IMG/VR virus record: IMGVR_UViG_3300008954_003475
Location: 62,001-126,000 of that record
Direction: 5' to 3' (one strand)
Length of the DNA: 64,000 bases
Shown: positions 41,505 through 63,739 of the stretch, one piece after another
Position numbering within the stretch: the stretch's first letter is position 1
Layout: each line of letters begins with the position of its first letter
Program-made: the position numbers and the translations under genes
The notes under the pieces: model-generated
Told to the model about the DNA's origin: nothing
The model's database searches: none
What the model saw: the letters and a program-made list of their open reading frames with translations, nothing else

Positions 41505-41513
41505 GAATAAACC

Positions 41514-48687: not shown

Positions 48688-49482
48688 ATGTCAGCAGGAA
48701 TAAAAGGATCACAAATACGAGATGAAACAGTAACCGCTGCAGATCCAGGCCCAAATTCTGTTGGAAACAGTGAGCTAGCTAGCACAGCAATCTCTAGCCA
48801 AACAGAAAAGAATCCAGCTGTAAACGGTGATTCTGTTTTAATCAGCGACTCTGCTGACTCCGGAGCCTTGAAGAGGGTTCAGATTGGAAACCTCGGAATT
48901 GGCGGAGGTGGTGGCGACTCAAATATGATTGAAGATGCCGATCATGATACGAAAATACAAGTAGAAGAATCTGCAGATGAAGATAAAATAAGATTTGATA
49001 CTGCTGGTGCTGAAAGAGTAATTATTGATAATGCTGGCAATGTCGGTATTAATATATCAACACCTAAAACCATACTTGATACTCACCACAACCCTACTGG
49101 GTTGTCTAATGATACCGGTGGGGGAGAAGTAGTTACTTTCGGCACTGGCAACCTAACTGCTGGGAAAATTTATTTTCTTAACAGCAGTGGAGCTTGGACT
49201 GAAACAGACGCCGATGCTATCCCAACAAGTGATGGTCTATTAGCCATTGCATTAGGCTCAGCACCATCAAATGGAATGCTTTTACGCGGCTTCTTTGATG
49301 CAACTACTTATCTTTCAAATTTTATTTCAGGTCTTCCTGTTTATCTTTCTGCAACAGCGGCAACTATGGATACAACACAACCTTCAGGTACCGGGAAAAT
49401 AGTCCGATGTATAGGCTATTGTACAAACACGGCCAATGTCATTTACTTTAATCCAAGCTCTACTACAGTAGAGTTATCATAA
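48688..49482 (+). CDS. Virion fibre/decoration-like protein (264 aa)
   Basis: GDSNMIEDADHDTKIQVEESADEDKIRFDTAGAER..I...GNVGI module. C-terminal GKIYFL...W..TDAD...GLLAIAL...PVYLS...PSGTG.IVR.IGY capsid-cement-like module. Confidence 0.6.
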   Translation: MSAGIKGSQIRDETVTAADPGPNSVGNSELASTAISSQTEKNPAVNGDSVLISDSADSGALKRVQIGNLGIGGGGGDSNMIEDADHDTKIQVEESADEDKIRFDTAGAERVIIDNAGNVGINISTPKTILDTHHNPTGLSNDTGGGEVVTFGTGNLTAGKIYFLNSSGAWTETDADAIPTSDGLLAIALGSAPSNGMLLRGFFDATTYLSNFISGLPVYLSATAATMDTTQPSGTGKIVRCIGYCTNTANVIYFNPSSTTVELS

Positions 49483-50560
49483 TGCCAATTAATAAAGTCA
49501 ATGGGAATTTACTTTCAGCTATTAACAAAATGCAAGGAATTGCCGATTCAGCTATCACCAAAATAAATGGACAAACTATTGGAGAGGCAATACACAGCCC
49601 ACTCTGGGTTGCAGTAGGGGCACAAAGCTTGCATACTCTACAGATGCAGACGCCTCAACCTGGACCGAGGTTGCGGTCGCTAGTGTTTCGGCCTTTAAAG
49701 ATCTCACATTCGGAAAGAATGGTAGTGGCACAGATACATGGTATGGGTGTTCCACCACAGATTCAAAAGGAGCCGTTTACAGCACAGACCCCACAGACGC
49801 CAATTCGTGGTCAACAGTTAATCCTCCGGGTTCCGGCGGCGGCACAACTATAGAATATAGTGCGACTGAAACTTTGATAATGGGCAGAGAACATGAAAAC
49901 TATTCAATTCGACGCTCCACAGACTTCGGGGTTACATGGGTTAACACGACAATTAATAATATTCCAGGCAATGATCCAAAAGCATCAGACTCTTTAGCAA
50001 CTGACGGAAATGGGTTGTGGATGGCAGGAATGGGAACACTAGGCGTTATATTAAAATCTTATGATGATGGTATCAATTGGTATAAGTCTACCGATTTGGG
50101 TTCCGACAAACATATTGGATTAGAATATAATAATGGCGCATGGATAGCAACGGAACAAGGCGAAACAATTAACAGATGTATATCTGTGGCTCAAAGCGAT
50201 ACCACAGATACATGGACCCAAACTGCTCCTCCAACATGGAATCGTCCTGCTGATGCAATTGCTCATGTAACTGGCAACACTTGGATGCTTGGCGCTACTA
50301 GACGAAATATGTATAAAAGCACAGATAATGGAGCAACTTGGACAGCTGTAACAAGCCTTACTAATGTTGCTGAAACATCTGCACAAACAAACAATAATGC
50401 CTACTCAATGGCTTCTGACGGCACTACAGTAGTGGCTACTGGCCGTAACGGCTATATTAATGTGTCAACCGATTTGGGCCAGTCTTGGACTGTGGCTCAT
50501 ACCATGTCAAATAATCAACACATGGTAGCTGTTGAATATAATAAGGTTAAGCCTTATTAA
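49482..50560 (+). pseudogene. BNR/Asp-box beta-propeller gene split by a 1-nt frameshift (359 aa if repaired)
   Basis: Frame switches after WVAVG at the G4 tract 49617-49620. The -1 frame reads TKLAYSTDADASTW... without stops into the 49874..50560 ORF. Asp-boxes STDFGVTW, SYDDGINW, STDNGATW, STDLGQSW. Confidence 0.75.
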
Positions 50561-50634: not shown

Positions 50635-50856
50635 TTAGCTTGAATACAAAAGCTTTTTCAGGGATCTTACTTGGTTATCGAACTTGCAGAAGTCACTGCT
50701 AAAGTATTCCAAAGATAACGTATCTGCTTTCGAGTCTTGATCATCCAGTATAAACTGAAACCTTCCAGTTGGAAGTTTTTTTGCGCTAACAAGCGGCAAA
50801 CCTTTAAAGGTCAAGTATGCAGCCAGTGCCAAATCAGATGTCTCATATTGATTCAT
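50635..50856 (-). CDS. DUF5659-like small protein
   Basis: YETSDLALAAYL...FQFIL...YFS pattern recalled for this family. GAGG SD. Confidence 0.55.
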   Translation of the reverse strand: MNQYETSDLALAAYLTFKGLPLVSAKKLPTGRFQFILDDQDSKADTLSLEYFSSDFCKFDNQVRSLKKLLYSS

Positions 50857-50904: not shown

Positions 50905-51408
50905 CTATTTCGCATCATGTTTCTCTATATACCTTCTGTGTGTAGAACAAATAGTATTACCATTTGGAGCCTGTCTCTTACACCTGTTGCCATCGGTTTT
51001 TACAAAATCACACTGTATAAATTCAAATCCGACCACATCGGTGTATGTATTATTCTCTTGATGATTAAGGGCCAAATCCTTAACCTCATCCATCTCTATA
51101 GGCTCAGACAGAATAGTCTCTTCCATAACGATGGGCCCAAAAGACTCTTCTTCAACCTCATCTTTCTCTTCCAAAGTAATATATGGATCTGGATTAATCA
51201 TTTCCATATATTGTTCACCAGAAGGTTTTAAGTCTGCAAGATTTTCTTCATAGTCGAAAAATGTGTCATACTTTTCCAACTCATAATCTTCTTCATCCAT
51301 AATTACATGATTCTTTCCTCGCCTGGAAAAAACAGAAGTTTTGGCCCTATTTTTAAGAGGAGTTGCTTCAATAAATTTTAATCTAGATTGTAATCTTTTG
51401 GGTATCAT
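50905..51408 (-). CDS. Acidic protein with a C-terminal CCCH-type zinc finger
   Basis: QCDFVKTDGNRCKRQAPNGNTICSTH. Confidence 0.6.
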   Translation of the reverse strand: MIPKRLQSRLKFIEATPLKNRAKTSVFSRRGKNHVIMDEEDYELEKYDTFFDYEENLADLKPSGEQYMEMINPDPYITLEEKDEVEEESFGPIVMEETILSEPIEMDEVKDLALNHQENNTYTDVVGFEFIQCDFVKTDGNRCKRQAPNGNTICSTHRRYIEKHDAK

Positions 51409-51439: not shown

Positions 51440-51475
51440 AAACAAAAAAGGTACAGTGGAAACCACTGTACCTTT
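51440..51475 (-). terminator. Rho-independent terminator after the major capsid gene
   Basis: 13-bp stem AAAGGTACAGTGG/CCACTGTACCTTT (51447-51475) followed on the minus strand by TTTGTTTTT. Confidence 0.9.
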
Positions 51476-51499: not shown

Positions 51500-52552
51500 T
51501 TAAGCAGTCACAGTACCTGTAGCGACACCACGAGGGTTGACGATACCAATACCAATGATTTCATTAACGACCCAACCAAGCTTAAGCTGCTTGGGCTCAT
51601 CGGCAGGAAGAACCTCAATGTCCTGACGGACAGGCATCACACCAACAAACTCTGGATCAGCACAAGCAAAGGCACGACCGGCTGGAACAACCTTGGATAC
51701 GACAATGTCGGCACCAAAGATGTGACCATAAAGTCCGGTCTGAAGCAACTCACGCTGAGTCACTGGATCGACCTGCGATCCACCGCCTGCACCAGCAGAC
51801 TCCCAGTTCAGCATATCAGTAAATTCATTAATGTTGAGGAAGTACTTAGAAGTAACTAAGTCCCAACGATCAATGCTTCGCTTAAGATCAAGCATACCAG
51901 ACTTAGAAAGCTGAGTGGTATTAGTTCCGCCTGTAGCGTTACCATCAGCATTAGAAAGGTCTAGCGAAACAGGAGCATTCTCACCACCGCCATTTGTAGA
52001 ATCTCCAGCGAACTGAAGAGCAGCAAAGACGTTAGCATCCTCCTGTGCCTGGATCTCCTGACGAGCCTTCTGCTGCGCACGATCAACAACGTTGAATCGA
52101 CGCCGCTTGACTTCAGCGATACGAACCGTTGGGTTTGAAACAACCTCAAACTCAGGGACGGTCACGCGATCACCAAAGACGCGAGACTCAGGGGCAGAAC
52201 CATTACTGGATACAACTACGGCCGCGACATCAATATCACGATCATAAACTGGAAGAGCGCCTTGTGGCAGCGGATCAACAACTAATGCCTTACGAGCGAC
52301 ACCCTGATAATCAAGGTTTCGACGGATCGGATTAGCCATTGCCTGACCTAAAGCAATCTTTCCTTCTTGGGTCATCAAAGCCTGCTTGATCATCTCATCT
52401 CTCTGGCTATCATTCAAGCCAGGCGCGGTGGCCTGAGCATTGCTTGATGGCTGAAGATCTTCGATAACAGAAGCATACTTGACGATTTGACTTAGAGCCT
52501 CCTGAACATTGGAGGCATTGATTTCACCATGTGTATTAAATAGTGTAGACAT
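51500..52552 (-). CDS. Major capsid protein (HK97 fold, 350 aa)
   Basis: IRRNLDYQGVARKALVVDPLPQG..PVYDRD (E-loop), KARQEIQAQEDANVFAAL (spine helix), GHIFGADIVVSKVVPAG..F (P-domain). Strong codon bias and a strong terminator after it. Confidence 0.9.
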   Translation of the reverse strand: MSTLFNTHGEINASNVQEALSQIVKYASVIEDLQPSSNAQATAPGLNDSQRDEMIKQALMTQEGKIALGQAMANPIRRNLDYQGVARKALVVDPLPQGALPVYDRDIDVAAVVVSSNGSAPESRVFGDRVTVPEFEVVSNPTVRIAEVKRRRFNVVDRAQQKARQEIQAQEDANVFAALQFAGDSTNGGGENAPVSLDLSNADGNATGGTNTTQLSKSGMLDLKRSIDRWDLVTSKYFLNINEFTDMLNWESAGAGGGSQVDPVTQRELLQTGLYGHIFGADIVVSKVVPAGRAFACADPEFVGVMPVRQDIEVLPADEPKQLKLGWVVNEIIGIGIVNPRGVATGTVTA

Positions 52553-52561
52553 AATATCCTC

Positions 52562-53218
52562 CTATGGACTAGTCGGGTTAAGACTAAGCAGGTATACTGC
52601 GTAGTACTCGACAGCAGTGTTAGTTAACCCTGCTGACGCTCTATTGGTTGAGACAAGTGACGAATCTGCCACTGCTCCACAGAAAACTCCAAGCTGATCA
52701 CCGCCTGTAGTTCCAAGACGACCTGTTGCCGCCTCTCCAAAGACAGCTGTATTAACAGCCGTCATAGCATCAATACCATTGGTCGCATGAGCGGTAGCGG
52801 CAGAGCCGTTAACGCCATAGAGACCAGGCTGATGCCACACGGTAACCTTACCGGAAGCACGATTAGTCGCAGGACCAATCGTTACTGCACCGGACTCACT
52901 TGTAGCCGCTCCAGTATTTGAGCCAATCAGTTCTCCAAACAAAGTACCATACTGAGCAATACCCTCGTCGGCAAGGCCGCCTAAGGCACCATCTGTACGA
53001 ACACTGAGCTGAAAGTTCCAAAGAATCGGAGCTAAAAGACCAGCACCACCGCCTACACCCATAGGACCAACATCGCCAACATCAGCAGCGTAACCATCAC
53101 CCGCAGAATCTGCGGCCAAGGATACATATTCACCACCAGTAATTGCAGCAGCATCGGCACCATCGAGATCAAACGTACCAAGGGGTCTTAACCCTGGGTT
53201 TAATAATTTAAGAGCCAT
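52562..53218 (-). CDS. Capsid decoration/cement protein; start revised to MALKLL
   Basis: GGAG SD before ATG 53218. Directly upstream of the MCP with the same codon bias. Gly/Ala-rich beta pattern ASGKVTVWHQPGLYGV. Confidence 0.7.
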   Translation of the reverse strand: MALKLLNPGLRPLGTFDLDGADAAAITGGEYVSLAADSAGDGYAADVGDVGPMGVGGGAGLLAPILWNFQLSVRTDGALGGLADEGIAQYGTLFGELIGSNTGAATSESGAVTIGPATNRASGKVTVWHQPGLYGVNGSAATAHATNGIDAMTAVNTAVFGEAATGRLGTTGGDQLGVFCGAVADSSLVSTNRASAGLTNTAVEYYAVYLLSLNPTSP

Positions 53219-53248
53219 TTTAATATTCTCCATATTAAATTTTACATT

Positions 53249-53273
53249 GATATGTTCAACCATTGAACATATC
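53249..53273. promoter_or_regulatory. Perfect 11-bp hairpin in the leader of the decoration/MCP genes
   Basis: GATATGTTCAA-CCA-TTGAACATATC with no U-tract on the minus strand. Confidence 0.55.
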
Positions 53274-53305: not shown

Positions 53306-55966
53306 TTACTTACTTCTTTTTTCAAGAACATCACGCACCCAGGCGTAGTTTGCTCTATAGTTTCCCGTTGGAGCACTAAGTGCCACTCCGTGTGTCTGAC
53401 GCTTTTGTTCTAATCCGTTTTCAACCAAGCCACCTCTTCCGATAGAGTCTAAGACAACTACCGCCTTTGGATGAGCCGAGTGAATCAGGTCAACTCCAGT
53501 TTCATCATGCACATTATATAGGGATTTGTAATCACCCTTTGGTGTTTCCGCCTTTTCGTCATACAGTCCTTTAAGACCTGTAAAATAAGATCGGAGATAT
53601 TGGTCGCTATTGTTAAGATCTGTTACAGCATCTTTACAATAGGCCTTCGAAACATCATCTGCGCCCTTAAAGAGCTCAGAATCATCGTAAATTGTATTGT
53701 TATTAGTAGAACTTAAAGCTTCTTCTGCAATTTTCTTAAGAGAATCAAATCTTTCTAGTCTACTTTCTTCAAAAATATCATGTGTTTGCTCCGCATATTT
53801 CATGAGCAACTCTATTCTTTCAGAAGCATCTACGCCTAATCTAAAGGCTCTACGGCGTCGGCGCCTAACGTCTCGACCCATCCTCTGCTTCTTTCTTCCG
53901 GCATAACCCTGGCCTCGTAAGCCTCTGATTTTTCGGCCCCTTGTTAGCCTTCGGCTTCTTCTTCTGCCCATAAGCTTTCCTCCAGCTACGCCTCTTTCTG
54001 CAAGGCCATAACCTGCGGCGGCAATAAATGCTTCATTTATAGCCCTTTGTGCATCGCCTCCCTGTTCAACAAGCTTTACATTATAAACACCTCCAGCGCC
54101 TTTTAGGTCATCCAGACCCTCTCTGACTGATGCTACAAGAAATGGATCTGTTGGGTTTGGGCCTCCTCGAACTCTTCTTACAAAAGCATAATGCAAATCT
54201 ATCCCATCATCCGTAGTAAAGGGTGGGACCAATCTAACATAAAATGGCATTCTATATACTCTCTTAAGCTGCTCTAAAGACTGTCTTAAAGCAGCTTGAG
54301 CCGCTGGATCTCCAGCATCCGCTGCAGCCTGTAACTCCGCAAGCCCTTGAGCCGCTCTTTTCCAATCTCCAGATCTTGCACTGCTTGTTATCTCCTCTAC
54401 TGATGGAGGAAGGTCTTCGGGGGTTTGACCGCCACTATCTTCCGGCGGTAGATCACCACCCTTGTCTTCATCATCGTCCTGCCAAGGAAGATCCCCCTGG
54501 CCTGCCTGATAGGCAAGGTAACCAATGCCTGCCACGGCAGCTCCTCCAAGAAGCCACTTTAACCACTTTCGGCCCTTAGCAGCTTTAACAGCATCCTCTC
54601 CAACATTAACGGCTAATTTTAAATGAGTATTTCCAATATCTTGAAGCTTTTGTATAACCCTTACATACTCATCATCAGCAATTCTTCCTGCTCGCTTAGC
54701 ATCGTCAAGAACAGTAACTATCCTGTCCATATCATCAGCCTCTCGCAACAAAACTTTATTTCCAGTTTGCTCAGCTAATTGACGCATTGAATTCTGTGTT
54801 TCTCCAATGTGAAGATGCAGCTCTGCTTTTCCGCCAGCAACATCCCCAACGCTTCCGCCGCCGCCTCCGCCGCCGCCAGCGCCAGCGCCGCCTCGACCTA
54901 TTGACGTTGCCTTAGCATCTACCTCAGATATAGCATTGGTAACCTGCTTCATCTCTGAATCAAGTCCATTCACATAGTTCTTAAAGCCTCTCATGCGGTT
55001 GCCGAAACCAGCCTGCTGAGTTGCTACTTGATTTATTCCCATAAATATATCACCAGTTGAGGCGTTGTCCCCAATCCTAAGTGACTGTCTCGCATTCTGT
55101 TCGGCAAGCTGAGCATACGAAAACCCCTTTTCTAAACTTTTTCTCATACTAGCACGAAGAGCGACCGGACGTATTTTATCAAGAGACTTCCAAGCGGCCT
55201 TTAAGTCTTTCACATCACCAGATCTTAAATACTGCTTTAATGAAACATCTATCTTTTCAATACCTTTTACTATCTTTTCTCGATTCCTCTCCATCTCCAG
55301 AAGCTCATCTGGAGTATATTTCCCTGCTCCACGAGCAGCCTCTTCGCCCAAACTCTTGGCGCTTCCCCTCGTAGCTCTTGCAAGATCTCGTTCTCGCTTA
55401 GCCGCTTCGGCTGCTGCTCCGCCGGTTCTTGTCCCGGCCGCTGCCGTATCACCTGCTTTTCCAAAAGCAGAATAATCACCTGACTTAATAGCCTTCCATA
55501 CCTTTTGTGCATTCTCTTTCCCAACAGCCCTTTCAACTATAAGAATCATCTCGTCTTCAGACTTTCCTGCCTTTACCGCATCCCCAAGAGCAGCGCCAAG
55601 CTTTTGAATCTTCTGTGTTTGTGCTCCGCCTCGATTACTGGCGGAAAACAAAGCCCTAAAGCCTTCCGGAAGATCCAGGCCTCTTATCGAACCTCCTGCT
55701 GCAATGGTGCCTTCCGTTGCAACAGCCGCTGCTCTGCGCGCAGCAGCAGCGGCTGCTTCAGCGGCAGCTTTGTCGGCCGCCCGGGCAGCGGCAACAGCAG
55801 CATCGGCCTCTCTTACGGCCTTAGCACCCCTAAGGGCATCGTCAAATCCCGAGACCACCCCGGCCTCTTTCTTTAAAGACTGATCTAATCTCTTCTCTTG
55901 AAGCCTGAACATAGTTTCAAAATATGCATTTATAGCGCTGTCTTCAGATATTTTATTTATACGCAT
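53306..55966 (-). CDS. Putative internal head / ejection protein (886 aa) with one TM helix
   Basis: Ala/Gly/Arg-rich helical protein in the head module. TM-like KWLKWLLGGAAVAGIGYLAY, an Arg-rich block, and hydrophobic-x-K-x-A motifs near both ends. Confidence 0.5.
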   Translation of the reverse strand: MRINKISEDSAINAYFETMFRLQEKRLDQSLKKEAGVVSGFDDALRGAKAVREADAAVAAARAADKAAAEAAAAAARRAAAVATEGTIAAGGSIRGLDLPEGFRALFSASNRGGAQTQKIQKLGAALGDAVKAGKSEDEMILIVERAVGKENAQKVWKAIKSGDYSAFGKAGDTAAAGTRTGGAAAEAAKRERDLARATRGSAKSLGEEAARGAGKYTPDELLEMERNREKIVKGIEKIDVSLKQYLRSGDVKDLKAAWKSLDKIRPVALRASMRKSLEKGFSYAQLAEQNARQSLRIGDNASTGDIFMGINQVATQQAGFGNRMRGFKNYVNGLDSEMKQVTNAISEVDAKATSIGRGGAGAGGGGGGGGSVGDVAGGKAELHLHIGETQNSMRQLAEQTGNKVLLREADDMDRIVTVLDDAKRAGRIADDEYVRVIQKLQDIGNTHLKLAVNVGEDAVKAAKGRKWLKWLLGGAAVAGIGYLAYQAGQGDLPWQDDDEDKGGDLPPEDSGGQTPEDLPPSVEEITSSARSGDWKRAAQGLAELQAAADAGDPAAQAALRQSLEQLKRVYRMPFYVRLVPPFTTDDGIDLHYAFVRRVRGGPNPTDPFLVASVREGLDDLKGAGGVYNVKLVEQGGDAQRAINEAFIAAAGYGLAERGVAGGKLMGRRRSRRLTRGRKIRGLRGQGYAGRKKQRMGRDVRRRRRRAFRLGVDASERIELLMKYAEQTHDIFEESRLERFDSLKKIAEEALSSTNNNTIYDDSELFKGADDVSKAYCKDAVTDLNNSDQYLRSYFTGLKGLYDEKAETPKGDYKSLYNVHDETGVDLIHSAHPKAVVVLDSIGRGGLVENGLEQKRQTHGVALSAPTGNYRANYAWVRDVLEKRSK

Positions 55967-56382
55967 GTAACTTCCTGCTCTAAAATCTCATCAATTGTTC
56001 TTTCGATCTTATAAGCCAATTTGATGTTTCCCTCTTCTATAGCCGCTCTCGCCAAGCTTCTAAGGTCATCAACAACTTCATCCTGAAGGTCATCACCATC
56101 CTCTATAAGTCCATCTTCTGCAGATTCATCATCTGCGACTTCATCATCTTGAGCATCGCCCGTAAAAACTGATTTTACAGTCTCCTTTACCTCTTGAGCT
56201 TTTTGTTTAACCTTTTCCAAAAGATTCATATTTTCGTTAGCCTCTTGAGCAACATCTGCGGCAATTTTTCTCTGAAGAATCTCTGCTCTATGAACAGTAT
56301 CTACAATGCTCTTTTCAAGCTCTTGCCATACTTCGCTGCTTTGGTAATGGGCTCGATCTTCCTTGCTCCATGAATTAGGCAT
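55957..56382 (-). CDS. Acidic head-associated protein (scaffold/core-like)
   Basis: GGAG SD, RKIAAD motif, acidic tract, C-terminal LAYKIERTIDEI helix. Confidence 0.5.
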   Translation of the reverse strand: MPNSWSKEDRAHYQSSEVWQELEKSIVDTVHRAEILQRKIAADVAQEANENMNLLEKVKQKAQEVKETVKSVFTGDAQDDEVADDESAEDGLIEDGDDLQDEVVDDLRSLARAAIEEGNIKLAYKIERTIDEILEQEVTCV

Positions 56383-56429: not shown

Positions 56430-57122
56430 TTACAACAACATGAATTCCAGGGTTCCAATCGCTGCAGATGGAGGCCCCGTACATATCGAAACTCCCGGAT
56501 GACTATCCGTAGGCTGAGAAGAGGTTAGCTTGCCGTCAAGCCCTACATATAAAGTGCAATTAACCGGATAAATCTGTGTTGTATCAAACTGATCTGTTGC
56601 ATATATACCTCTTTGGTAATGAAGAGTAACTCGACCACTACCTACTGTAGTGTCGTCTCCCGGTTTGCCTGCAACTCTATAAATATAATTTACAATTATC
56701 CTATAGCTATCATATGTTCCATCGCCATCGGCATCATGGTTTAATTCCGTTCCAGCCGGAATAGTCACAACTCCATTTACAGAATTCAAAACAATAGATA
56801 TAGTAGAGGTAAAGCTACTTTCTATAATATTTGGATATTCCATAACGCCAGTAACCTCAACGGTTCCAACGCGATTTCCATTATCATCTATTTCAGAAGA
56901 TTGAGCCTCAATCACTAAGACCTCATCTATTTGAGCCTTTGTAAACGCAGAGGTTCTAACATCATCAATAATACCTAACGGGGCAGTTCCATCGCTTATA
57001 CTTGCAACTATATCATTTCCAATTAATCCAAGCTGGGCAAACATGCCGGGTTCAAACTCTGCCGTTGGATCAACGGGCAAGCTCATTGGCAATGCATTAC
57101 CACTATGAATAACTTTAAGCAA
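56430..57122 (-). CDS. Divergent capsid decoration-like protein with a central insertion
   Basis: TTG start with GGGGAG SD. GSGRVTLHYQRGIY parallels ASGKVTVWHQPGLY, and LYVGLDGKLT parallels ...GKLTT/GRLGT of the two other decoration genes. Confidence 0.55.
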   Translation of the reverse strand: MLKVIHSGNALPMSLPVDPTAEFEPGMFAQLGLIGNDIVASISDGTAPLGIIDDVRTSAFTKAQIDEVLVIEAQSSEIDDNGNRVGTVEVTGVMEYPNIIESSFTSTISIVLNSVNGVVTIPAGTELNHDADGDGTYDSYRIIVNYIYRVAGKPGDDTTVGSGRVTLHYQRGIYATDQFDTTQIYPVNCTLYVGLDGKLTSSQPTDSHPGVSICTGPPSAAIGTLEFMLL

Positions 57123-57147
57123 TTTGTTCTCCCCGGTTAAAAGTATT

Positions 57148-57178
57148 AAAAGGGAGGGAAAAGACTTCCCTCCCTTTT
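57148..57178 (-). terminator. Terminator-like hairpin (possibly bidirectional)
   Basis: AAAAGGGAGGGAA-AAGAC-TTCCCTCCCTTTT, giving a T-run after the GC stem on both strands. Confidence 0.7.
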
Positions 57179-57207
57179 ATTTTACTATTAATAGTAAAAA
57201 TATTTTA

Positions 57208-57762
57208 CTAGTAACCGATTTTATTAATGGTAACTCTCACCATATCAGCAGCAAATTTATCACCATTATTAGAAAAATCAGAGGCCATCTTATTAAGGGT
57301 ATTAACTATACCCTCTTTTCTTTTGCCCTCTTTTACCAAGTCGCCCCTAATGCTAAAAGCAGTAGCCTCAACAACGTCTGCCGCGAAGGCTTCGCCCTTA
57401 GCTCGCAAGCTGCCTGCAATCTTTCCAAGTCCATTCATAATATATTGGCCGGAAGGGTCAACGGATGAAAATGTTTCAAGATTATCTATCACATCATCGA
57501 CCATAGAAGCGCTATCGGTTACAGCATCATCACCAGAATCAACCAACATATCAGAAAGAGCTGCGTCAGAAAGATAGTCTTCAGCATCATTAATCATGTC
57601 ATCAGCTTTATCTCCGCCATCTTGGTTGAGCTTTTTATCTCCGCCATCATTGTTGCCCAGAGGCTTCTGCTCCTGAGCTTCCTTTACCATTGTTTGACCA
57701 CTGCCCATGAGCCTTGAAAACTCATGAGCAATGTTATCGCCATTAGTTCTAATGCTATACAT
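57208..57762 (-). CDS. Head-associated protein with internal LxKxA(G/S) helical repeats; start revised to MYSIRT
   Basis: Repeats LGKIAGSLRAKGEAFAADVVEAT and LNKMASDFSNNGDKFAADMVRVT, plus MVKEAQ. Confidence 0.6.
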   Translation of the reverse strand: MYSIRTNGDNIAHEFSRLMGSGQTMVKEAQEQKPLGNNDGGDKKLNQDGGDKADDMINDAEDYLSDAALSDMLVDSGDDAVTDSASMVDDVIDNLETFSSVDPSGQYIMNGLGKIAGSLRAKGEAFAADVVEATAFSIRGDLVKEGKRKEGIVNTLNKMASDFSNNGDKFAADMVRVTINKIGY

Positions 57763-57770
57763 ATTACCCC

Positions 57771-60700
57771 CTATTCCCACATCGAAGACAAAGAGTCTGG
57801 AGATAATAGTACTGTGTTAGAAGAAGTGTGGGATCCAGAATCAGACTCTACACCAATATTGACGCCTCCAAGATCAGAAGCAATCTTTGTAGAACTGACA
57901 GATCTCGCGTTTCCTATGCTTCTCTTGAATGCCTCAAACGCATTATTATCAAAAGTCATAATCTCATCAACCTGTCTATCAAGAGCCACCTTGGTTGTTC
58001 CAAGAAGTCCCTTGTTCTGCATTTCCATTCCAACGTCATATGCTCTACGCAACTTCACTCTGTACACCTCTCTCTCTTCATCCGCTCGCTTTTCAGCCAA
58101 CTTAGTATTCAGAGTATTCTGCAATGAAGCTGTTACACTGTTTGGATTACTCTCAACAGCGTTTGTTGTTACATTAGTATCGGCAACAATCGAGCTAAGA
58201 CCATCCTCTGCAACCTCGTCCGCAACAGTTGTCGTATCATCAGCACTCTTCAACAGAGCCTCTCTGCTTCTGGCACGTTCTGCCAAAACTCGACCTTCTG
58301 CCTGCTTTAGAATGGCTTCACGACGAGAGCGCCGAAGGTTCATAGCCTCAAGAACCAGTCCGTCTGCAGCTTCATCGCCGCTGCCATCGCCCGCCTCCCA
58401 AGCTTCATCGTCAGAACCTACATCTGGACCGAGCATTGCATCTTCAGCATAATTGACAGTATCTTCAGCAGCATCCTCCACAGTATCTTCAGCAGCATCA
58501 TCAGCAGCATCAGCAGATAGGTCAAAATCTTGAGCAAATCTCACCAAAGCCCTGGCCTCGCCTGTAATTTGATCTGCATCTTTTACAGCAGAACTTGCAA
58601 GCTTAACGAACTGGCCTGTCTGAGCGTTAGAAAGCTTAGAAATATTATCATAAGTTTCTGCAACCATAGAAAGTTCATCAGCAGAGCTGTCTAGCTTTCT
58701 ATATGCTTTCTTAAGATTTGTTACAAGCTGACTTGATAACGCTCCAAGGCCGCCATCTCCAGCCTCAACCTCTTCGCCCGGCCCGCCTTTATCCTTTCCG
58801 GTAAAGACATTTACGTCAACATCTGCAAGCCTCTGATCTTCAAGCTGTCCAACAAGGTCTCTCACCTCATCGAGCAACTGCTCAATTTCGGCCAACCTAT
58901 TATCAATAGCTTCAGCAGGCTCCTCCTCAGCCCCCTCTTCCGCCTCAGGCTCTTCGTCGCCAAGCGGAGGGAGATCATCCATCGGAGCAGCTTCAGCCTC
59001 ACCGCCTCCGAGGTCTGGAACATCACCGCCTCCGAGGTCTGGAACATCACCGCCTCCGAGGTCTGGAGCATCACCGCCTCCGAGGTCTGGCATGTCTTGA
59101 GCTGTCTTTAAAAGACCCGAAACATAATTAAGACCAAAAGCGCGAATCTGATCACAGACCTCTCTGCCATACTCCTGGCTCTTTAACCAGTTCCAATTAC
59201 TTCTTAATTCTGGTCCAAAAATATCACCAGCAGTAGCGGCAACAACCCTTTTGTTCCCTGCAAAAACTTCAAACATACTGTTTGTATGATCAACAGACCC
59301 ATCCAAATTTCTACGAACACTAAAGCGTGTACTCAAAGAAGGCCCATTATAAGCCTGCTTTGTAAGTCCGGCGGACCCATCAGAGGCTCTATGCAGAGTT
59401 TCCTTGACCTGAGAATCTCCAGGCCACGTACCAGAAGTTCCGCCCATGTTGCCGCCTTGCAGCATCTGCTTGTCTTGATTGTCCCTAACGCCCTTATAGT
59501 CTTCAGACTTATAAGCGTTAGGCTCAACACCATCTGCTCCACCTTGCATATAGGCCAACCTGCGCAATCTGCGATCCTCTAACTGAGCACGACTAAGCTT
59601 CTCCTTAGCGTTAATCTCTTCCTTCTCCTTAGCTGACAGGTCATAAGTTCCCGTCATCTGCCTATCTTGGTTATCTCTAAGATTCTTAGAATCTTCAGAC
59701 TTATAAGTATTGGGCTCTGCACCATCTGCTCCACCTTGCATATAGGCTATACGGCGGCGAAGCTCTGCCCTCTTTCTCATTCTTGACTCATTCATAATAT
59801 CCTCCACTATTGAATTGATTGAAAAGTCGTCTACATAATCATTGGTCTTTTCATTATTGTTTGCCACTTTAACGTTAAGACCAACGCTTGTAGCTGCGAA
59901 TCCAGTCAAAGGCTCACCGCCAGACGGATGCACTTGTGATAAAACATCATCACCTTGTGGAAAATCGGGATTATTCCCAGAATCTCCACCACCTAAATAA
60001 CCTATCCTAGAACTTACTGCACTCTGTTCTTGAACATCCCCAGGAAGCCTTGATCCCTTGACATTCTCATATGTAGTAAATCTCTCAGTAGGCGTTACAG
60101 AAGTATCCTCTCTCGAAGGCAAATTCAATTCTCCAATTAAATTTGCAATTATTTCTTTTACATTAGAAGGTACTCCAGGATCACTTAGTACATTTGCCGC
60201 CTGGGATACCGCTTTTAAAGCTTCAGCTGTATTTCTAGATCTTTCCGATGAATCTGTAAACTCATCAGACGAATTCTTTAACAAACCATTATTTTCCAAA
60301 AATCCTCTTACAATATTTTTTCTTTCCGATACAGAACAGCCATCTTTACCACAGGCCGTCTTCATGATTCCTTCCAAATGCTCTGCCTGCTTAAGACTCA
60401 AGGTCCCAAGCATACTGCTAACATCATCTATTCCATAATTTATAAACTCAGTTTTATATTCTTGCAAAGAAGCAATACACTTTAATAATACCGCTCCAGG
60501 TTCAGCAGGCTGAACAACAAGGCTGTACTCTATTGGCTTTAGCCCAACATTAATCTCCCCATGAGCTGTCTTGTTTAAAATATGTTGACAATACTCTTTT
60601 TGAGTAGTGGCCTTATTTAAACATTCAGAACATACGGATGTTTCTACGGCTGTTCCCATAGAGCCATATCTCACAAGGCCTGTTTCAACCTTTCTTGCTA

Positions 60701-61190
60701 AATCTGGATAATTAATCTTGTCCAATGCACACAAGCCAACAACTTGCTTGAACTTTTCATCATAATGGGTATCTAAGATTATTCCTCTTATTCCGTCTAC
60801 GGAACTTGATTCATGATCCCTACACAAAGGAAGGCCAACCCATCGACTGGTGGCCTTCTTTAGTTCAGACTCTGGAAAAATATCTCTATTATTATTCCTA
60901 TGTGGCTGAACGTTTCCATGCCACTTCCAATTTTCATCGAAAAAGCCCCAAGCGTCTTCTCCGCCCGAGGCTTTCTTTATATGCCCTTCTTCGTTTAACA
61001 AAGAAGATTCTGCTGCTTTTAAAAATATTATTGAAAAATATAAAAAGTCATCTGACTTAGGAGCTATAGATTTTATATTGCTAGCTAATTTTGATAGTTG
61101 CTTTACCAGCTTTGGGTTTGCAAGCACTTCTTGCTGTTCGTGCGTATCTACAACATTGTTCTCTGGAGAAGAACATATCTTTTTAAACAT
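57771..61190 (-). CDS. Prohead protease fused to a long scaffold-like region (~1140 aa); start revised to MFKKIC
   Basis: GLPLCRDH...GIRGIILD (His), YGSMG (Ser) followed by a CxxC...C.H Zn insert and EYSLVVQPAEPGA. Long acidic/coiled-coil C-terminal part. Confidence 0.8.
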   Translation of the reverse strand: MFKKICSSPENNVVDTHEQQEVLANPKLVKQLSKLASNIKSIAPKSDDFLYFSIIFLKAAESSLLNEEGHIKKASGGEDAWGFFDENWKWHGNVQPHRNNNRDIFPESELKKATSRWVGLPLCRDHESSSVDGIRGIILDTHYDEKFKQVVGLCALDKINYPDLARKVETGLVRYGSMGTAVETSVCSECLNKATTQKEYCQHILNKTAHGEINVGLKPIEYSLVVQPAEPGAVLLKCIASLQEYKTEFINYGIDDVSSMLGTLSLKQAEHLEGIMKTACGKDGCSVSERKNIVRGFLENNGLLKNSSDEFTDSSERSRNTAEALKAVSQAANVLSDPGVPSNVKEIIANLIGELNLPSREDTSVTPTERFTTYENVKGSRLPGDVQEQSAVSSRIGYLGGGDSGNNPDFPQGDDVLSQVHPSGGEPLTGFAATSVGLNVKVANNNEKTNDYVDDFSINSIVEDIMNESRMRKRAELRRRIAYMQGGADGAEPNTYKSEDSKNLRDNQDRQMTGTYDLSAKEKEEINAKEKLSRAQLEDRRLRRLAYMQGGADGVEPNAYKSEDYKGVRDNQDKQMLQGGNMGGTSGTWPGDSQVKETLHRASDGSAGLTKQAYNGPSLSTRFSVRRNLDGSVDHTNSMFEVFAGNKRVVAATAGDIFGPELRSNWNWLKSQEYGREVCDQIRAFGLNYVSGLLKTAQDMPDLGGGDAPDLGGGDVPDLGGGDVPDLGGGEAEAAPMDDLPPLGDEEPEAEEGAEEEPAEAIDNRLAEIEQLLDEVRDLVGQLEDQRLADVDVNVFTGKDKGGPGEEVEAGDGGLGALSSQLVTNLKKAYRKLDSSADELSMVAETYDNISKLSNAQTGQFVKLASSAVKDADQITGEARALVRFAQDFDLSADAADDAAEDTVEDAAEDTVNYAEDAMLGPDVGSDDEAWEAGDGSGDEAADGLVLEAMNLRRSRREAILKQAEGRVLAERARSREALLKSADDTTTVADEVAEDGLSSIVADTNVTTNAVESNPNSVTASLQNTLNTKLAEKRADEEREVYRVKLRRAYDVGMEMQNKGLLGTTKVALDRQVDEIMTFDNNAFEAFKRSIGNARSVSSTKIASDLGGVNIGVESDSGSHTSSNTVLLSPDSLSSMWE
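59001..59090 (-). repeat. 24-nt tandem repeat (about 3.75 copies) encoding DLGGGD(A/V)P
   Basis: ACCGCCTCCGAGGTCTGGA(A/G)CATC units at 59001, 59025, 59049, 59073. Confidence 0.9.
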
Positions 61191-61286
61191 AGCAAACCCT
61201 TCTAGACTAATAAACCGGTACAAACATTTATATAAATATTAGTTTTTAAACTTTTTGTGTAATTTTTTTTTGAATTACATAGTTTT

Positions 61287-61471: not shown

Positions 61472-63739
61472 TTACTCCGATAGTACCAAAATTCCTAAAA
61501 TATTTGAATTTATATACTCTTTTGCTCTAGAAAGAGAAAGTCCCATATCATTTATTAAGTTTTCTGCACTTCCAGTTTTCTCTGTACATTGATTTATAAA
61601 ATCATCAGATTCTATAATATTTATTAAATCAAAAACGTCTTTAATTCCATCGGACGAGTTTTTTGCAGCAAGCGCAATAGAGCTTATTATCTCAGATGTA
61701 GTTGAAACATCCTTGATGTCATTCATTATCTGAATTCCATTCTTTATGTTTATTAACATTCTTTTTGTAATTCGCGCATTTCTTTTAGAAGATTGACTAT
61801 ATTGTCCTTTGCTATTTGCAATTACCTCAACATTTCCTTGAACTTTCTGATATTCTGCAAGATTCTTTTTAAGATTTTCAACCAACGTTTCGCACATATC
61901 TTCAGATCTGTCAAAATATCTCATCGCTTGCTTTGCTTTGTTCTTAACCTCATCCGGAACAGGAATGCCTGCTGTTTTTACAAAAGAATCATTATATAGC
62001 TCAATAGTTCTTCCTGAATACTTTTCTTTAAGGGCCGAAAAAACATCCTCTGTTCCAAAGCCTTCAGGAACTCTGATCAAATCTGTATCAACAGAAATCT
62101 TAACGCCTGTCTTAATCTCAATCTCTTTTTGAATTATATTTTCTAATACAAATTTATCATTATCTCCCCTGGATACAAAAACAAGTTTTTTATTTGTATC
62201 TGTCGATATATCAGATATTTTCTTCAATGCTTTATTTCTATTTACATTATTCAGATTAGAAAAGCTCATAAATTGACTAGGGATTAATGAATATTTAAAA
62301 TTAATATTTTCATAGAAACCCTTTGATACTAAATTATTTAATCTAATATCTACAAAAGCTTCTTTATCAATCGAAAAGGTTTCATCATATAGACCTCTAA
62401 ATATTTTATCATCCCTATCTGGAGGCCTATGCCTATACAGTCTAATCTTTGCTTTATTATCTATAATTAAATTATCAATATCAAATGCAACTATATCTTT
62501 TATACTATCATTATTTAATGATGCCTTTTTAACTATTGTTTTTGCAGAATTTTCATCATCATTTATAACATAAATCTTATTATTTAAAATATTATAAAAG
62601 CCAGAATTTAATAAATTAGAACGCTTAAAAATAACTTTATCTACACCAATTCCATTAATTATATTTGATATCTTTGATAAATCTTTATCAAGACCTGCTC
62701 CATAATCTATATACATTAAATTAGATTCTTTAATACCAAGAACATCAGAGAGTCCTCCGGATATCTCTAAAACGTTTTTAACCCCAGAGCACCCATATAC
62801 GCCCAAAGATCCTGGTTTAATATTTTTGCAAATCTTTTTAATTTTTGAATTATCATCTATAAAAATAATATCAATTGGATAATTAACACTTCCCATGTGA
62901 TAACAAACGTCTGTAGGCTTATCATATGGAAATAATAATCCGGATTCCTTTTCTAATTTAGAATAAACTTGGAGGCCATCAATTTTTTCTTTATATGTTT
63001 TTGCCACATCACACTTAAAAACAATAGATGCATCATTGATATTGTCTTTCCCATAGCACCTAACAACTGCCGTTTTGTTTAAATCATTTCGTGAAACAAT
63101 ATACTTGCCAATCTTATCTATATGTTTATCTGTAATAATAAATCCTAATTTTTCTATAGAAGAAGATATGTCTATTGAGTTACTCGTAACAATAAACCCA
63201 TGGCCAACCGGTCTGAGGTGGTCGCAGATGTTGCCCAAAACTATCTCTAAAGAATCTTCTTCAGATGGCGTGCTGGTTATATAAAAACCATCAAATTTAT
63301 TTCTAAAAGTATGAAACATTGGATTTCCATATTCTTGATGAAAATTATGTAAATTTACTTTACTCGTTGCATTTTTAGATAAATTAATTAAATTATGACC
63401 TGCTTTTAAAATAACAGAAGCATTATCATCTGTCTGTTCTCCAATCCCCAAAACTGTTGATCCTCGCCTAAGCAGCCGCATAAACTTGTTGGAAAGATTT
63501 GCCAAAGCTTGATACTCATCATCTTCTATATCTGAATATAAATCTTCTGCCGGAAAAAATATACCTCCAGAGTATCCCACAGGGGCTTGCTCTTCAGGAG
63601 TTGTAGATATTTGAGCCACCATCATATCATAACGAGGCTGTGCATCCATATGTATATCCATGTGCGCATCTCCCGATGCAGACATAGATCCCATCTCAAG
63701 CTCTGGATCTCCAATATATGGCCAAGATAACTTTCTCAT
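61472..63739 (-). CDS. Multidomain protein containing a DUF192-like domain
   Basis: FKCDVAKTYKEKIDGLQ....LEKESGLLFPY......YHMGSVNYPIDIIFID....IKKI...IKPG...VLEISGG matches the DUF192 pattern. Confidence 0.65.
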   Translation of the reverse strand: MRKLSWPYIGDPELEMGSMSASGDAHMDIHMDAQPRYDMMVAQISTTPEEQAPVGYSGGIFFPAEDLYSDIEDDEYQALANLSNKFMRLLRRGSTVLGIGEQTDDNASVILKAGHNLINLSKNATSKVNLHNFHQEYGNPMFHTFRNKFDGFYITSTPSEEDSLEIVLGNICDHLRPVGHGFIVTSNSIDISSSIEKLGFIITDKHIDKIGKYIVSRNDLNKTAVVRCYGKDNINDASIVFKCDVAKTYKEKIDGLQVYSKLEKESGLLFPYDKPTDVCYHMGSVNYPIDIIFIDDNSKIKKICKNIKPGSLGVYGCSGVKNVLEISGGLSDVLGIKESNLMYIDYGAGLDKDLSKISNIINGIGVDKVIFKRSNLLNSGFYNILNNKIYVINDDENSAKTIVKKASLNNDSIKDIVAFDIDNLIIDNKAKIRLYRHRPPDRDDKIFRGLYDETFSIDKEAFVDIRLNNLVSKGFYENINFKYSLIPSQFMSFSNLNNVNRNKALKKISDISTDTNKKLVFVSRGDNDKFVLENIIQKEIEIKTGVKISVDTDLIRVPEGFGTEDVFSALKEKYSGRTIELYNDSFVKTAGIPVPDEVKNKAKQAMRYFDRSEDMCETLVENLKKNLAEYQKVQGNVEVIANSKGQYSQSSKRNARITKRMLINIKNGIQIMNDIKDVSTTSEIISSIALAAKNSSDGIKDVFDLINIIESDDFINQCTEKTGSAENLINDMGLSLSRAKEYINSNILGILVLSE

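What the first reader, a model, noticed from the sequence alone, without database searches (positions are those of the whole stretch)
53306..55966. Putative ejected head protein: cleavable ends, TM helix and an Arg-rich block
Seen: candidate cleavage motifs near residue 35 and in the last ~170 aa flank a core with Ala-rich helices, a Gly run, a single TM-like helix (~54500-54570), an acidic Pro-rich linker, and a strongly basic block (RRRSRRLTRGRKIRGLRGQGYAGRKKQRMGRDVRRRRRR, ~53850-53970). Inference: a DNA-associated pilot protein packaged in the head that inserts into the inner membrane on infection, or a superinfection/host-takeover effector. Ejection proteins are well known in podoviruses but poorly defined in this kind of myovirus.
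Basis: inference. Interest (0 to 1): 0.62.

Follow-up and report, generated by a model that had tools for sequence, protein, structure and literature searches.

The report
Basic head-module protein, marine jumbo phage
This 886-residue gene is a real, conserved but uncharacterised head-module protein of an uncultivated marine jumbo contractile-tailed phage; its layout fits a protein built into the head and trimmed by the head protease, but whether it is ejected into the host or enters a membrane is untested.

Summary
It lies in the late head operon of a ~222-kb fragment of a jumbo myophage whose capsid protein is 46% identical to that of Bacillus phage G. The order protease-fusion, p190, p230, p141, this gene, p233, capsid protein is kept in the four related contigs read in full.

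It founds a metagenome-only family: 320 cluster representatives, none in cultured phages. Conservation is end-weighted: leader 40%, middle ~20%, last 135 aa 70% identity. A short motif (hydrophobic-x-K-x-A) is about 4-fold enriched in the head-module proteins. In this family it is kept at residue 31 (20/24) and residue 765 (23/24), flanking a basic 78-kDa core.

AlphaFold gives a confident fold with no known match for residues 520-710, including the Arg block. It gives no globular fold for the ultra-conserved C-terminus. The "TM helix" is weak here (hydropathy 1.12) but kept in position. The Arg block's charge is not kept (0 to +23).

Best reading: a protease-processed internal head protein anchored by its termini. 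Ejection and membrane insertion remain inference. A scaffold or inner-capsid-lining role is not excluded.

The parts
53306..55966 (-). ORF of 886 aa (P0001), 95.4 kDa, pI 9.3; founding member of a metagenome-only head-module family
55862..55966 (-). N-terminal leader, residues 1-35 (MRINK..S..D.YFE.M.RFN.K...phi-x-K-x-A). It ends in the motif LKKEA (residues 31-35, nt 55862-55876). Candidate targeting sequence or propeptide.
   Evidence: Alignments A1 and A6; 40% mean identity; motif kept in 20/24
54572..55861 (-). Variable N-terminal half, residues 36-465. It holds the Ala-rich stretch (41-80, nt 55727-55846) and the Gly run (359-371, nt 54854-54892). The family's length differences lie mainly in this region.
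   Evidence: 19-22% identity; P0047 has its hydrophobic segment at residue 1270 of 1647
54500..54571 (-). Gly/Ala-rich hydrophobic segment, residues 466-489 (KWLKWLLGGAAVAGIGYLAYQAG). Basic residues precede it and acidic residues follow. TM-like but weak.
   Evidence: Kyte-Doolittle mean 1.12 here, 0.88-1.99 in relatives; the position is kept, also in the permuted 331-410 aa relatives
54392..54499 (-). Acidic Pro/Gly-rich linker, residues 490-525 (pI 4.05)
53972..54391 (-). Confidently predicted folded domain, residues 526-665: three-helix bundle, beta-hairpin (PPF...L.YAF) and helices. No known fold match.
   Evidence: AlphaFold pLDDT 87-97; no match in PDB, VIA-wide, BFVD or the Atlas
53849..53971 (-). 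Arg-rich block, residues 666-706 (21 K+R, 1 D+E). It is predicted as helix-loop-long helix continuous with the folded domain.
   Evidence: net charge of the aligned stretch 0 to +23 across the family
53660..53806 (-). Three phi-x-K-x-A motif instances spaced 22 residues apart: LMKYA at 721, LKKIA at 743, LFKGA at 765. Candidate C-terminal processing or docking sites.
   Evidence: kept in 14/24, 6/24 and 23/24 homologs
53309..53713 (-). Ultra-conserved C-terminal region, residues 752-886 (STNN...ADDFSKSYYKDAV...AHPK...GGLVENGLEQKRQTHGVALSAPTGNYRANYAW). No autonomous globular fold is predicted.
   Evidence: 70% mean identity; 320 representatives found; pLDDT ~30 with 18 sequences, and 67 with pTM 0.30 with 141 sequences
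55957..56382 (-). p141, an acidic 141-aa protein (pI 4.3). Its last 10 nt overlap the start of the 886-aa ORF (…AGGAAGTTACATGCGTATAA), giving translational coupling.
   Evidence: the overlap is kept in all related loci where both genes are present
57771..61223 (-). 1150-aa head-maturation protease fused to a long acidic scaffold-like extension. It carries 10 motif instances.
   Evidence: phrog_18299 at residues 126-221
57208..57780 (-). p190, an acidic protein with 3 motif instances. Its likely true start is the ATG at 57762.
56430..57122 (-). p230, a very conserved protein of unknown role
52562..53263 (-). p233, a Gly/Ala-rich protein between this gene and the capsid protein. It sits where the decoration protein gp26 sits in phage G. 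Its likely true start is the conserved MALKLLNPG.
51500..52552 (-). Major capsid protein (350 aa). It is PHROG 2522 type, 46.5% identical to Bacillus phage G gp27, and has a 42-aa N-terminal extension containing the invariant IVKYAS.
57147..57179 (-). Strong terminator-like hairpin upstream of p230; start of the p230-to-capsid-protein transcription unit
51447..51475 (-). Strong terminator-like hairpin just after the capsid gene

Best explanation
The gene encodes an internal head (prohead core) protein of an uncultivated marine jumbo myophage.

**Shown:**
- It belongs to the late head operon.
- It is translationally coupled to an acidic neighbour.
- It is the one basic protein among acidic scaffold-like proteins.
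- It has conserved ends around a fast-evolving middle.

**Inferred:**
- It is recruited into the assembling prohead through its conserved termini. The N-terminal 35-residue leader would act like a capsid-targeting sequence. The ultra-conserved but non-globular C-terminal ~120-135 residues would act as a segment that becomes ordered only on a conserved partner, either the capsid shell or the core.
- The phage's protease (1150-aa fusion protein) would cut at or near hydrophobic-x-K-x-A sites, next to residue 35 and within 721-769. That would free a ~78-kDa basic core (pI ~9.5). The core carries a Gly-rich hydrophobic helix, an acidic/Pro linker, a folded domain with no known fold match, and an Arg-rich arm.
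- In this subclade the Arg arm most likely binds the packaged DNA or the acidic scaffold.

**More speculative:** the core leaves the head with the DNA, and its hydrophobic helix then engages the host inner membrane.
For: - **Head-module position and synteny.** The full order protease-fusion > p190 > p230 > p141 > family gene > p233 > capsid protein is seen in four related contigs read in full. It also holds, by gene sizes, in two contigs listed without DNA, one of which has the protease gene in two pieces. A seventh contig is cut just upstream of the family gene and shows only the downstream part.
- **Coupling.** There is a 10-nt overlap with p141 and an AGGA ribosome-binding site. Terminators bracket the unit p230 to capsid protein.
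- **End-weighted conservation.** Leader 40%, middle 19-22%, C-terminal region 70% identity. The C-terminal profile finds 320 representatives, and the domain is almost always at or within 22-35 aa of the C-terminus of 450-1672 aa proteins.
- **Conserved partner candidates.** The capsid protein is at least 82% identical across the 120 best of more than 1800 hits. A conserved binding partner therefore exists for a conserved tag.
- **Motif.** 24 observed against 5.4 +/- 2.3 expected in head proteins (0 of 2000 shuffles), and 6.1 against 1.55 per 1000 aa genome-wide. It is kept at residues 31 (20/24) and 765 (23/24). It is invariant as IVKYAS in the N-terminal extension of 6 capsid proteins, and present at conserved N-terminal positions in the protease and p190.
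- **Charge.** pI 9.3 against 4.2-5.7 for all neighbours.
- **Structure.** The C-terminal region is not globular even with 141 sequences (pTM 0.30). Residues 520-710 fold confidently.
- **Hydrophobic segment.** A Gly-rich hydrophobic segment is kept in position, even in permuted distant relatives encoded directly upstream of the same type of capsid protein.
Against: - There is no virion proteomics and no cultured relative. tblastn with four family members and an HMM search found nothing in 50,697 phage records, nor in phage G, LR745208, Rctr197k or GR7B.
- The motif was defined post hoc. It may be a docking or helix-capping motif rather than a cleavage site, and the protease's specificity is unknown.
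- The hydrophobic segment scores 1.12, below TM thresholds.
- Arg-block basicity drops to 0 to +5 in several branches.
- No enzymatic or known domain gives an independent functional handle.
- The position between protease and capsid gene equally fits a scaffold.
Confidence: 0.45

Rival explanations
1. Scaffolding or core protein proper. It co-assembles with the capsid protein through its conserved C-terminal region, helps set the size of a very large capsid, is cut into pieces by the protease, and leaves before or during DNA packaging. It has no role in infection.
For: - The gene lies between the protease and the capsid gene, the canonical scaffold position.
- In distant relatives the family gene is directly upstream of the capsid gene.
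- The variable region has low-complexity Ala-rich stretches.
- The C-terminal end is the most conserved part, as in scaffolds whose C-terminus binds coat protein (P22 gp8 from my own knowledge).
- There are several motif instances near the C-terminus.
Against: - The module already holds three strongly acidic, motif-rich scaffold-like candidates: the protease extension with 10 sites, p190 with 3 sites, and p141.
- This protein is basic (pI 9.3) and has only 4 sites, clustered at the ends, so the 78-kDa core would stay intact.
- Neither a conserved hydrophobic Gly-rich segment nor a confidently folded 190-aa domain is a usual scaffold feature.
- Length varies 450-1672 aa within a clade with near-identical capsid proteins.
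Confidence: 0.25
2. Minor capsid protein lining the inner face of the shell. The extended, ultra-conserved C-terminal region lies along capsid-protein capsomers as a cement or tape-measure-like element. The rest projects inward and contacts DNA. It stays in the capsid after ejection.
For: - The C-terminal region is highly conserved yet predicted non-globular, with short helices and extended segments.
- Its conservation parallels that of the capsid protein and p230.
- Related contigs reach 345 kb, which implies a very large capsid. From my own knowledge, large capsids such as phiKZ and PBCV-1 use extended inner minor proteins.
Against: - If the well-kept site at 765-769 is a cleavage site, the C-terminal region would be separated from the rest.
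- The hydrophobic segment and acidic linker remain unexplained.
- Phage G, with the same type of capsid protein, has no homolog.
Confidence: 0.15
3. Not a virion component. It would be an assembly chaperone or a membrane-associated initiator of prohead assembly, or a host-takeover or superinfection-exclusion effector that merely sits in the late operon.
For: - A hydrophobic segment follows the positive-inside pattern, with K/R before it and D/E after it.
- There is no direct evidence of packaging.
Against: - A single central hydrophobic helix would place one ~400-aa half outside the cytoplasm, and there is no N-terminal signal-like hydrophobic stretch.
- There is strict synteny and translational coupling inside the structural operon.
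- Its most conserved region tracks the most conserved structural proteins.
- No effector or enzyme domain was found.
Confidence: 0.08

Closest known systems
T4 internal proteins IPI-III and Alt (capsid-targeting-sequence proteins cleaved by gp21)
   Same: - Basic protein in an acidic scaffold environment.
- Short conserved N-terminal leader ending at a candidate protease site.
- Encoded by a myovirus with a gp21/assemblin-type prohead protease hit.

The T4 properties are from my own knowledge and PMC9026906.
   Different: - No sequence or profile similarity.
- The motif is hydrophobic-x-K-x-A, not L/I-x-E.
- It has a second, much more conserved C-terminal module, a hydrophobic segment and a large size (886 aa).
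- The gene lies inside the head operon.
Ejection (E) and inner-body proteins of phiKZ-like giant phages (SPN3US, 201phi2-1)
   Same: Both come from a giant myovirus. Both are large head proteins of unknown fold with N-terminal propeptides removed by the prohead protease, packaged with the DNA (PMC5694885, PMC7411985, PMC10052503).
   Different: - Unrelated type of capsid protein: phage G / PHROG 2522, not phiKZ type.
- No homology.
- A single gene with no paralogue in the 222-kb record, whereas, from my own knowledge, phiKZ-like phages have paralogue families.
- A different candidate motif.
- A conserved C-terminal tag.
Podovirus ejection proteins (T7 gp14/gp15/gp16; P22 gp7/gp20/gp16)
   Same: In both, a latent hydrophobic segment sits in an otherwise soluble head-internal protein. 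P22 gp7 also loses a 20-residue leader (my own knowledge).
   Different: - No homology.
- This is a contractile-tailed phage, where a trans-envelope channel built from head proteins is not established.
- The hydrophobic segment is weak here.
Scaffolding proteins with a C-terminal coat-binding end (P22 gp8, lambda Nu3, T4 gp22)
   Same: The gene lies between the protease and the capsid gene, and the C-terminal end is the most conserved part.
   Different: It is basic rather than acidic, has a folded domain and a hydrophobic segment, has few internal motif sites, and shows very variable length.

Membership tests
T4-type CTS internal head proteins | Sequence or profile homology to IPI-III, Alt or other annotated internal proteins | tested here: not met
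   No PHROG or Pfam family at E<=0.01, apart from a sub-threshold DUF6384 hit
T4-type CTS internal head proteins | Short N-terminal targeting leader ending at a prohead-protease site | tested here: inconclusive
   The conserved 35-aa leader ends in phi-x-K-x-A, kept in 20/24. The motif is enriched in head proteins. Cleavage itself has not been shown.
T4-type CTS internal head proteins | Present in mature heads and ejected with the DNA | not testable with these tools
   Uncultivated IMG/VR record, ~66% complete
phiKZ-like ejection / inner-body proteins | Homology to phiKZ, SPN3US or 201phi2-1 head proteins, in a genome with a phiKZ-type capsid protein | tested here: not met
   tblastn against 50,697 phage records found nothing. 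The capsid protein is PHROG 2522 / phage G type.
Podovirus ejection proteins (T7 gp14-16, P22 gp7/20/16) | Sequence homology | tested here: not met
Podovirus ejection proteins (T7 gp14-16, P22 gp7/20/16) | Membrane-active hydrophobic segment | tested here: inconclusive
   Kyte-Doolittle mean 1.12 here, 0.88-1.99 in relatives; Gly/Ala-rich; position kept
Scaffolding proteins | Gene between protease and major capsid gene | tested here: met
Scaffolding proteins | Acidic, largely helical, non-globular protein that is degraded or expelled | tested here: not met
   pI 9.3. Residues 520-710 fold confidently (pLDDT ~90). Motif sites lie only near the ends. Expulsion cannot be tested.
SPP1 gp7 / Mu F minor head proteins (PF04233) | Pfam Phage_Mu_F domain | tested here: not met
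   No Pfam hit

The most novel reading that the evidence does not exclude
The family is a previously unrecognised class of head-stored ejection protein in an abundant clade of marine jumbo myophages. In this reading the protein is loaded by a two-ended tag: an N-terminal leader plus an ultra-conserved C-terminal segment that folds on binding and docks on the capsid shell. The prohead protease releases it at hydrophobic-x-K-x-A sites. It is delivered with the DNA, after which its Gly-rich helix oligomerises in the inner membrane while the Arg-rich domain (no known fold match) escorts the DNA end.
Probability: 0.15. Interest if true: 0.7.

Novelty: new variant of a known kind. Interest (0 to 1): 0.45.

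Why it matters
Phages with the phage G type of capsid protein include a very abundant, entirely uncultivated marine clade: more than 1800 capsid-protein hits and contigs up to 345 kb. Nothing is known about how their very large heads are built or what they carry besides DNA.

This family is a conserved, lineage-specific component of that head module, with three testable properties:
- A candidate protease recognition motif shared by the capsid protein, protease, p190 and this protein.
- A domain that is extremely conserved but not autonomously folded, and so probably reports a conserved binding surface.
- A confidently predicted domain with no known fold match.

If a member is cultured, one virion mass-spectrometry experiment would settle both the motif and the fate of the protein. 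It would also show whether ejection proteins exist outside phiKZ-like giant myoviruses.

Tried and rejected
- **Family scans.** Pfam and PHROG scans of the protein and of long relatives gave nothing, apart from a sub-threshold DUF6384 hit at 466-581 (E 0.005, 16 bits against a cutoff of 25). I disregard that hit.
- **PHROG scan of 141 C-terminal domains.** Only weak unnamed hits (phrog_3675, 7 members, best E 0.0018).
- **PDB sequence-profile searches with A2 and A4.** Chance-level hits only.
- **Fold searches of the 520-886 model.** No match in PDB by Foldseek (best E 3). VIA-wide gave a best Z of 6.1 on a generic three-helix bundle. BFVD gave a best E of 0.07. The Atlas gave TM <= 0.29 by the model's length, none of the ten rows reaching 0.5. 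The ESM Atlas feature search gave no usable hit, and its own model of the whole protein is poor (pTM 0.20).
- **Cultured-phage searches.** tblastn against cultured-phage records with P0001, P0161, P0064 and P0152 found no match. HMM searches of whole records of phage G, LR745208, Rctr197k and Vibrio phage GR7B found no match, while the window's own genome matched as a positive control.
- **Paralogues in the own genome.** None found by tblastn.
- **Complex prediction.** Capsid protein with the C-terminal region gave no verdict (score 0.00; controls not run). This counts neither for nor against binding.
- **Leader comparison.** A profile-profile comparison of this family's leader with the p190 leader aligned only the 8-column xxKxA motif (E 0.14). 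A shared targeting-leader fold is not supported.
- **Capsid N-terminal extension.** I tested whether the extension co-occurs with the family. The absence in phage G fits, but Rctr197k aligns from residue 4 and lacks the family, so I dropped the idea.
- **L005 upstream genes.** Neither the 358-aa nor the 729-aa protein upstream of P0161 is related to the protease.
- **Tools and codes not used.** I used no reads tools and named no alternative genetic code.
Full report
**1. The observation**

The window holds an ATG-started ORF at 53306..55966 on the minus strand, 886 aa. All listed features are there:
- Ala-rich residues 41-80 (22 Ala in 40).
- A Gly run at 359-371.
- A Gly/Ala-rich hydrophobic stretch at 466-489 (nt 54500-54571), preceded by K/R/W and followed by an acidic Pro/Gly linker at 490-525.
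- An Arg block at 666-706 (nt 53849-53971) with 21 K+R and one acidic residue.

The start codon lies inside the last codons of the upstream 141-aa gene, behind an AGGA ribosome-binding site. It is supported by the leader MRINK..S..D.YFE.M, kept in most homologs.

**2. Genome and neighbourhood**

The window is bases 62001-126000 of a single 221,878-bp linear IMG/VR virus record, judged ~66% complete. The 350-aa protein at 51500-52552 is a major capsid protein of PHROG 2522. It is 46.5% identical to gp27 of the 498-kb Bacillus phage G. A 1080-aa tail sheath lies at 21521-24763, so the phage has a contractile tail.

On the minus strand the head module reads as follows:
- a 755-aa DUF192 protein;
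- a 1150-aa protein with a head-maturation-protease hit at residues 126-221 and a long acidic extension;
- p190, p230 and p141;
- the 886-aa protein;
- p233;
- the capsid protein.

Strong terminator-like hairpins at 57179-57147 and 51475-51447 bracket the unit from p230 to the capsid gene.

The full gene order, including the 10-nt overlap between p141 and the family gene, recurs in four related metagenomic contigs read in full. One is from Tara Oceans. By gene sizes it also holds in two contigs listed without DNA, one of which has the protease gene in two pieces. A seventh contig is cut just upstream of the family gene and shows only the downstream genes.

The capsid protein is extraordinarily conserved: the best 120 of more than 1800 hits are at least 82% identical, on contigs up to 345 kb. 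This is therefore an abundant, uncultivated clade of marine jumbo phages.

**3. The family**

The word search found 24 relatives of 547-1163 aa. A profile of the last 152 residues, searched against 1.84 billion cluster representatives, found 320 proteins at E<=0.001 and 97 at E<=1e-30. In almost all of them the domain sits at the C-terminus, or 22-35 residues before it, of proteins of 450-1672 aa.

Four representatives (331-410 aa) carry only the second half of the domain, near their N-terminus. It is followed by a hydrophobic segment and a further ~170-250 residues with no family hit. One of them is encoded directly upstream of a PHROG 2522 capsid protein.

No cultured phage has the family. 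tblastn with four divergent members against 50,697 phage records was blank. HMM searches of phage G, LR745208, Rctr197k and Vibrio phage GR7B were blank too, while the window's own genome matched at 5e-61. There is no paralogue in the 222-kb record.

**4. Conservation pattern**

Mean identity of 23 homologs to this protein, by region:

| Region | Residues | Mean identity |
|---|---|---|
| Leader | 1-35 | 40% |
| Variable part | 36-465 | 19-22% |
| Hydrophobic segment | 466-489 | 27% |
| Folded domain | 526-665 | 31% |
| Arg block | 666-706 | 36% |
| C-terminal region | 752-886 | 70% |

The architecture really is conserved ends around a variable middle. The length differences lie mainly in the N-terminal half. 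No Pfam domain appears in the longer members, so there is no recognisable enzymatic cargo.

**5. The candidate cleavage motif**

Aligning orthologous head proteins from five loci showed a recurring hydrophobic-x-K-x-A element near conserved N-terminal positions:
- IVKYAS, invariant in the 42-aa N-terminal extension of six capsid proteins. Phage G's capsid protein lacks this extension.
- [ST]KLA in the protease.
- MVKEA or KKVA in p190.
- LKKEA in this protein.

Counts of [LIVMF].K.A:
- 24 in the eight head-module proteins, against 5.4 +/- 2.3 in composition-preserving shuffles (0 of 2000 reach 24).
- 6.1 per 1000 aa in the head module, against 1.55 per 1000 aa in the other 166 ORFs.
- The protease's scaffold-like extension has 10 and p190 has 3.
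- This protein has 4, at residues 31, 721, 743 and 765. The last three are exactly 22 residues apart.

Across 24 family members the motif is kept at residue 31 in 20, at 721 in 14, at 743 in 6 and at 765 in 23.

I defined the motif after seeing the sequences, and no cleavage has been shown. It could equally be a docking motif. If it does mark cleavage, the products would be:
- a 4-kDa leader;
- a ~78-kDa core of pI ~9.5 (residues 36-769);
- a 13-kDa C-terminal piece.

**6. Structure**

AlphaFold2 on residues 520-886 with 18 sequences gave pLDDT 87-97 for residues 520-710. That region contains a three-helix bundle, a beta-hairpin and further helices. The Arg block is modelled as helix, loop and long helix. 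Residues 735-886 scored about 30.

With a 141-sequence alignment the C-terminal region still reached only pLDDT 67 and pTM 0.30, as short helices without a compact fold. A region that is 70% identical across the family yet does not fold on its own is best explained by folding on a conserved partner.

The confident 520-710 domain has no match in PDB, the 48,000-chain VIA search, BFVD or the ESM Atlas.

**7. The hydrophobic segment and the Arg block**

The hydrophobic segment scores only 1.12 (Kyte-Doolittle, 19 residues). That is below usual transmembrane values. Relatives range from 0.88 to 1.99. A Gly-rich hydrophobic stretch with the same flanks is kept in position throughout the family and in the permuted relatives.

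A single central membrane helix could not be inserted in the producing cell without exporting one ~400-residue half. If it is membrane-active at all, it must be latent, as in podovirus ejection proteins. That step is inference.

The Arg block's net charge is +22 here but ranges from 0 to +23 in the family. Strong DNA or acid-scaffold binding is therefore a trait of this subclade, not of the family.

This protein is the only basic one (pI 9.3) among neighbours of pI 4.2-5.7.

**8. Interpretation**

The most economical reading is an internal head (prohead-core) protein. It would be recruited through conserved termini, trimmed by the phage protease, and leave a basic core inside the head with the DNA (confidence 0.45).

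Functionally the closest parallels are T4's basic internal proteins with their capsid-targeting sequence, and the propeptide-bearing ejection proteins of phiKZ-like phages (PMC9026906, PMC5694885, PMC7411985, PMC10052503). It is not a member of any of these families by sequence.

It also differs from them in several ways:
- a second, dominant C-terminal tag;
- a different candidate motif;
- a hydrophobic segment;
- a folded domain with no known fold match.

Ejection and membrane insertion are possible but unsupported by any direct evidence. The rivals are a true scaffold that exits (0.25), an inner-capsid-lining minor protein (0.15) and a non-virion role (0.08).

A complex prediction of the capsid protein with the C-terminal region returned no verdict. 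It is not used as evidence either way.

**9. Verdict**

- **Observation:** confirmed.
- **Interpretation:** partly supported. Head protein with conserved, probably processed ends: yes. Pilot, membrane or effector role: untested.
- **Novelty:** a sequence-novel, metagenome-only family that looks like a new variant of a known kind of protein (a protease-processed internal head protein).
- **Interest:** moderate (0.45). The main value is a set of sharp, cheap experimental predictions for an abundant uncultivated phage clade.

Noticed in passing
window 57771-61223 (-): The 1150-aa protease-fusion protein has tandem PDLGGGD[AV] repeats. It also has a duplicated ~35-aa unit (RR[IL]AYMQGGADG.EPN.YKSED.K..RDNQD.QM) in its acidic extension. 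Its N-terminal 11 codons (TTG start) are absent from orthologs, so the real start is probably the ATG giving MFKKICSSPEN.
   Followed up: partly
window 61472-63739 (-): A 755-aa head-module protein carries a DUF192 (PF02643) domain at residues 242-339 (E 3e-18). It is conserved in all related loci. It is not shown to be the portal. By synteny the portal is more likely the ~474-503-aa gene further upstream, beyond the window end, which in locus L003 follows a 974-aa gene with intein and LAGLIDADG hits.
   Followed up: partly
window 56430-57122 (-): p230 is nearly as conserved as the capsid protein across loci and has no family hit. It may be a second shell or vertex protein.
   Followed up: no
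window 51500-52552 (-): The capsid protein has a 42-aa, almost invariant N-terminal extension (LFNTHGEINASNVQEAL.QIVKYAS.IEDLQPSS) that phage G gp27 lacks. It is a likely propeptide or scaffold-binding arm.
   Followed up: partly
window 50635-50856 (-) and 50905-51408 (-): A 73-aa ORF has the same size and position as the DUF5659 gene downstream of the capsid gene in related loci. This was not scanned directly. A 167-aa acidic ORF ends in a Cys/His-rich motif like a zinc finger.
   Followed up: no
window 583-8799, 11364-16697, 30104-36016, 26471-30094 (-): Four very large ORFs (2738, 1777, 1970 and 1207 aa) lie around the tail sheath gene. The 1777-aa and 1207-aa ORFs had no PHROG hit; the other two were not scanned. 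They are presumably tail, baseplate or fibre giants.
   Followed up: partly
window 40872-43298 (+) and 48688-50560 (+): There are short plus-strand islands in an otherwise minus-strand window, and GC skew flattens there. The 594-aa ORF has tail-fibre PHROG hits. The 228-aa ORF at 49874-50560 looks like a beta-propeller/BNR-type repeat protein.
   Followed up: no
L005:2-2191: This is the distant branch where the family domain is N-terminal. The gene two upstream encodes a 729-aa protein (5'-truncated) with a PG_binding_1-like segment just under Pfam's cutoff, plus collagen-like repeats. A cell-wall-binding domain next to the capsid gene hints at ejected head or neck proteins in that lineage.
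   Followed up: partly
window 53660-53806 (-), and p190 residues 118 and 162: The three C-terminal motif instances in the 886-aa protein are spaced exactly 22 residues apart. Two in p190 are 44 apart. This may be a repeated helical docking unit rather than independent cleavage sites.
   Followed up: no
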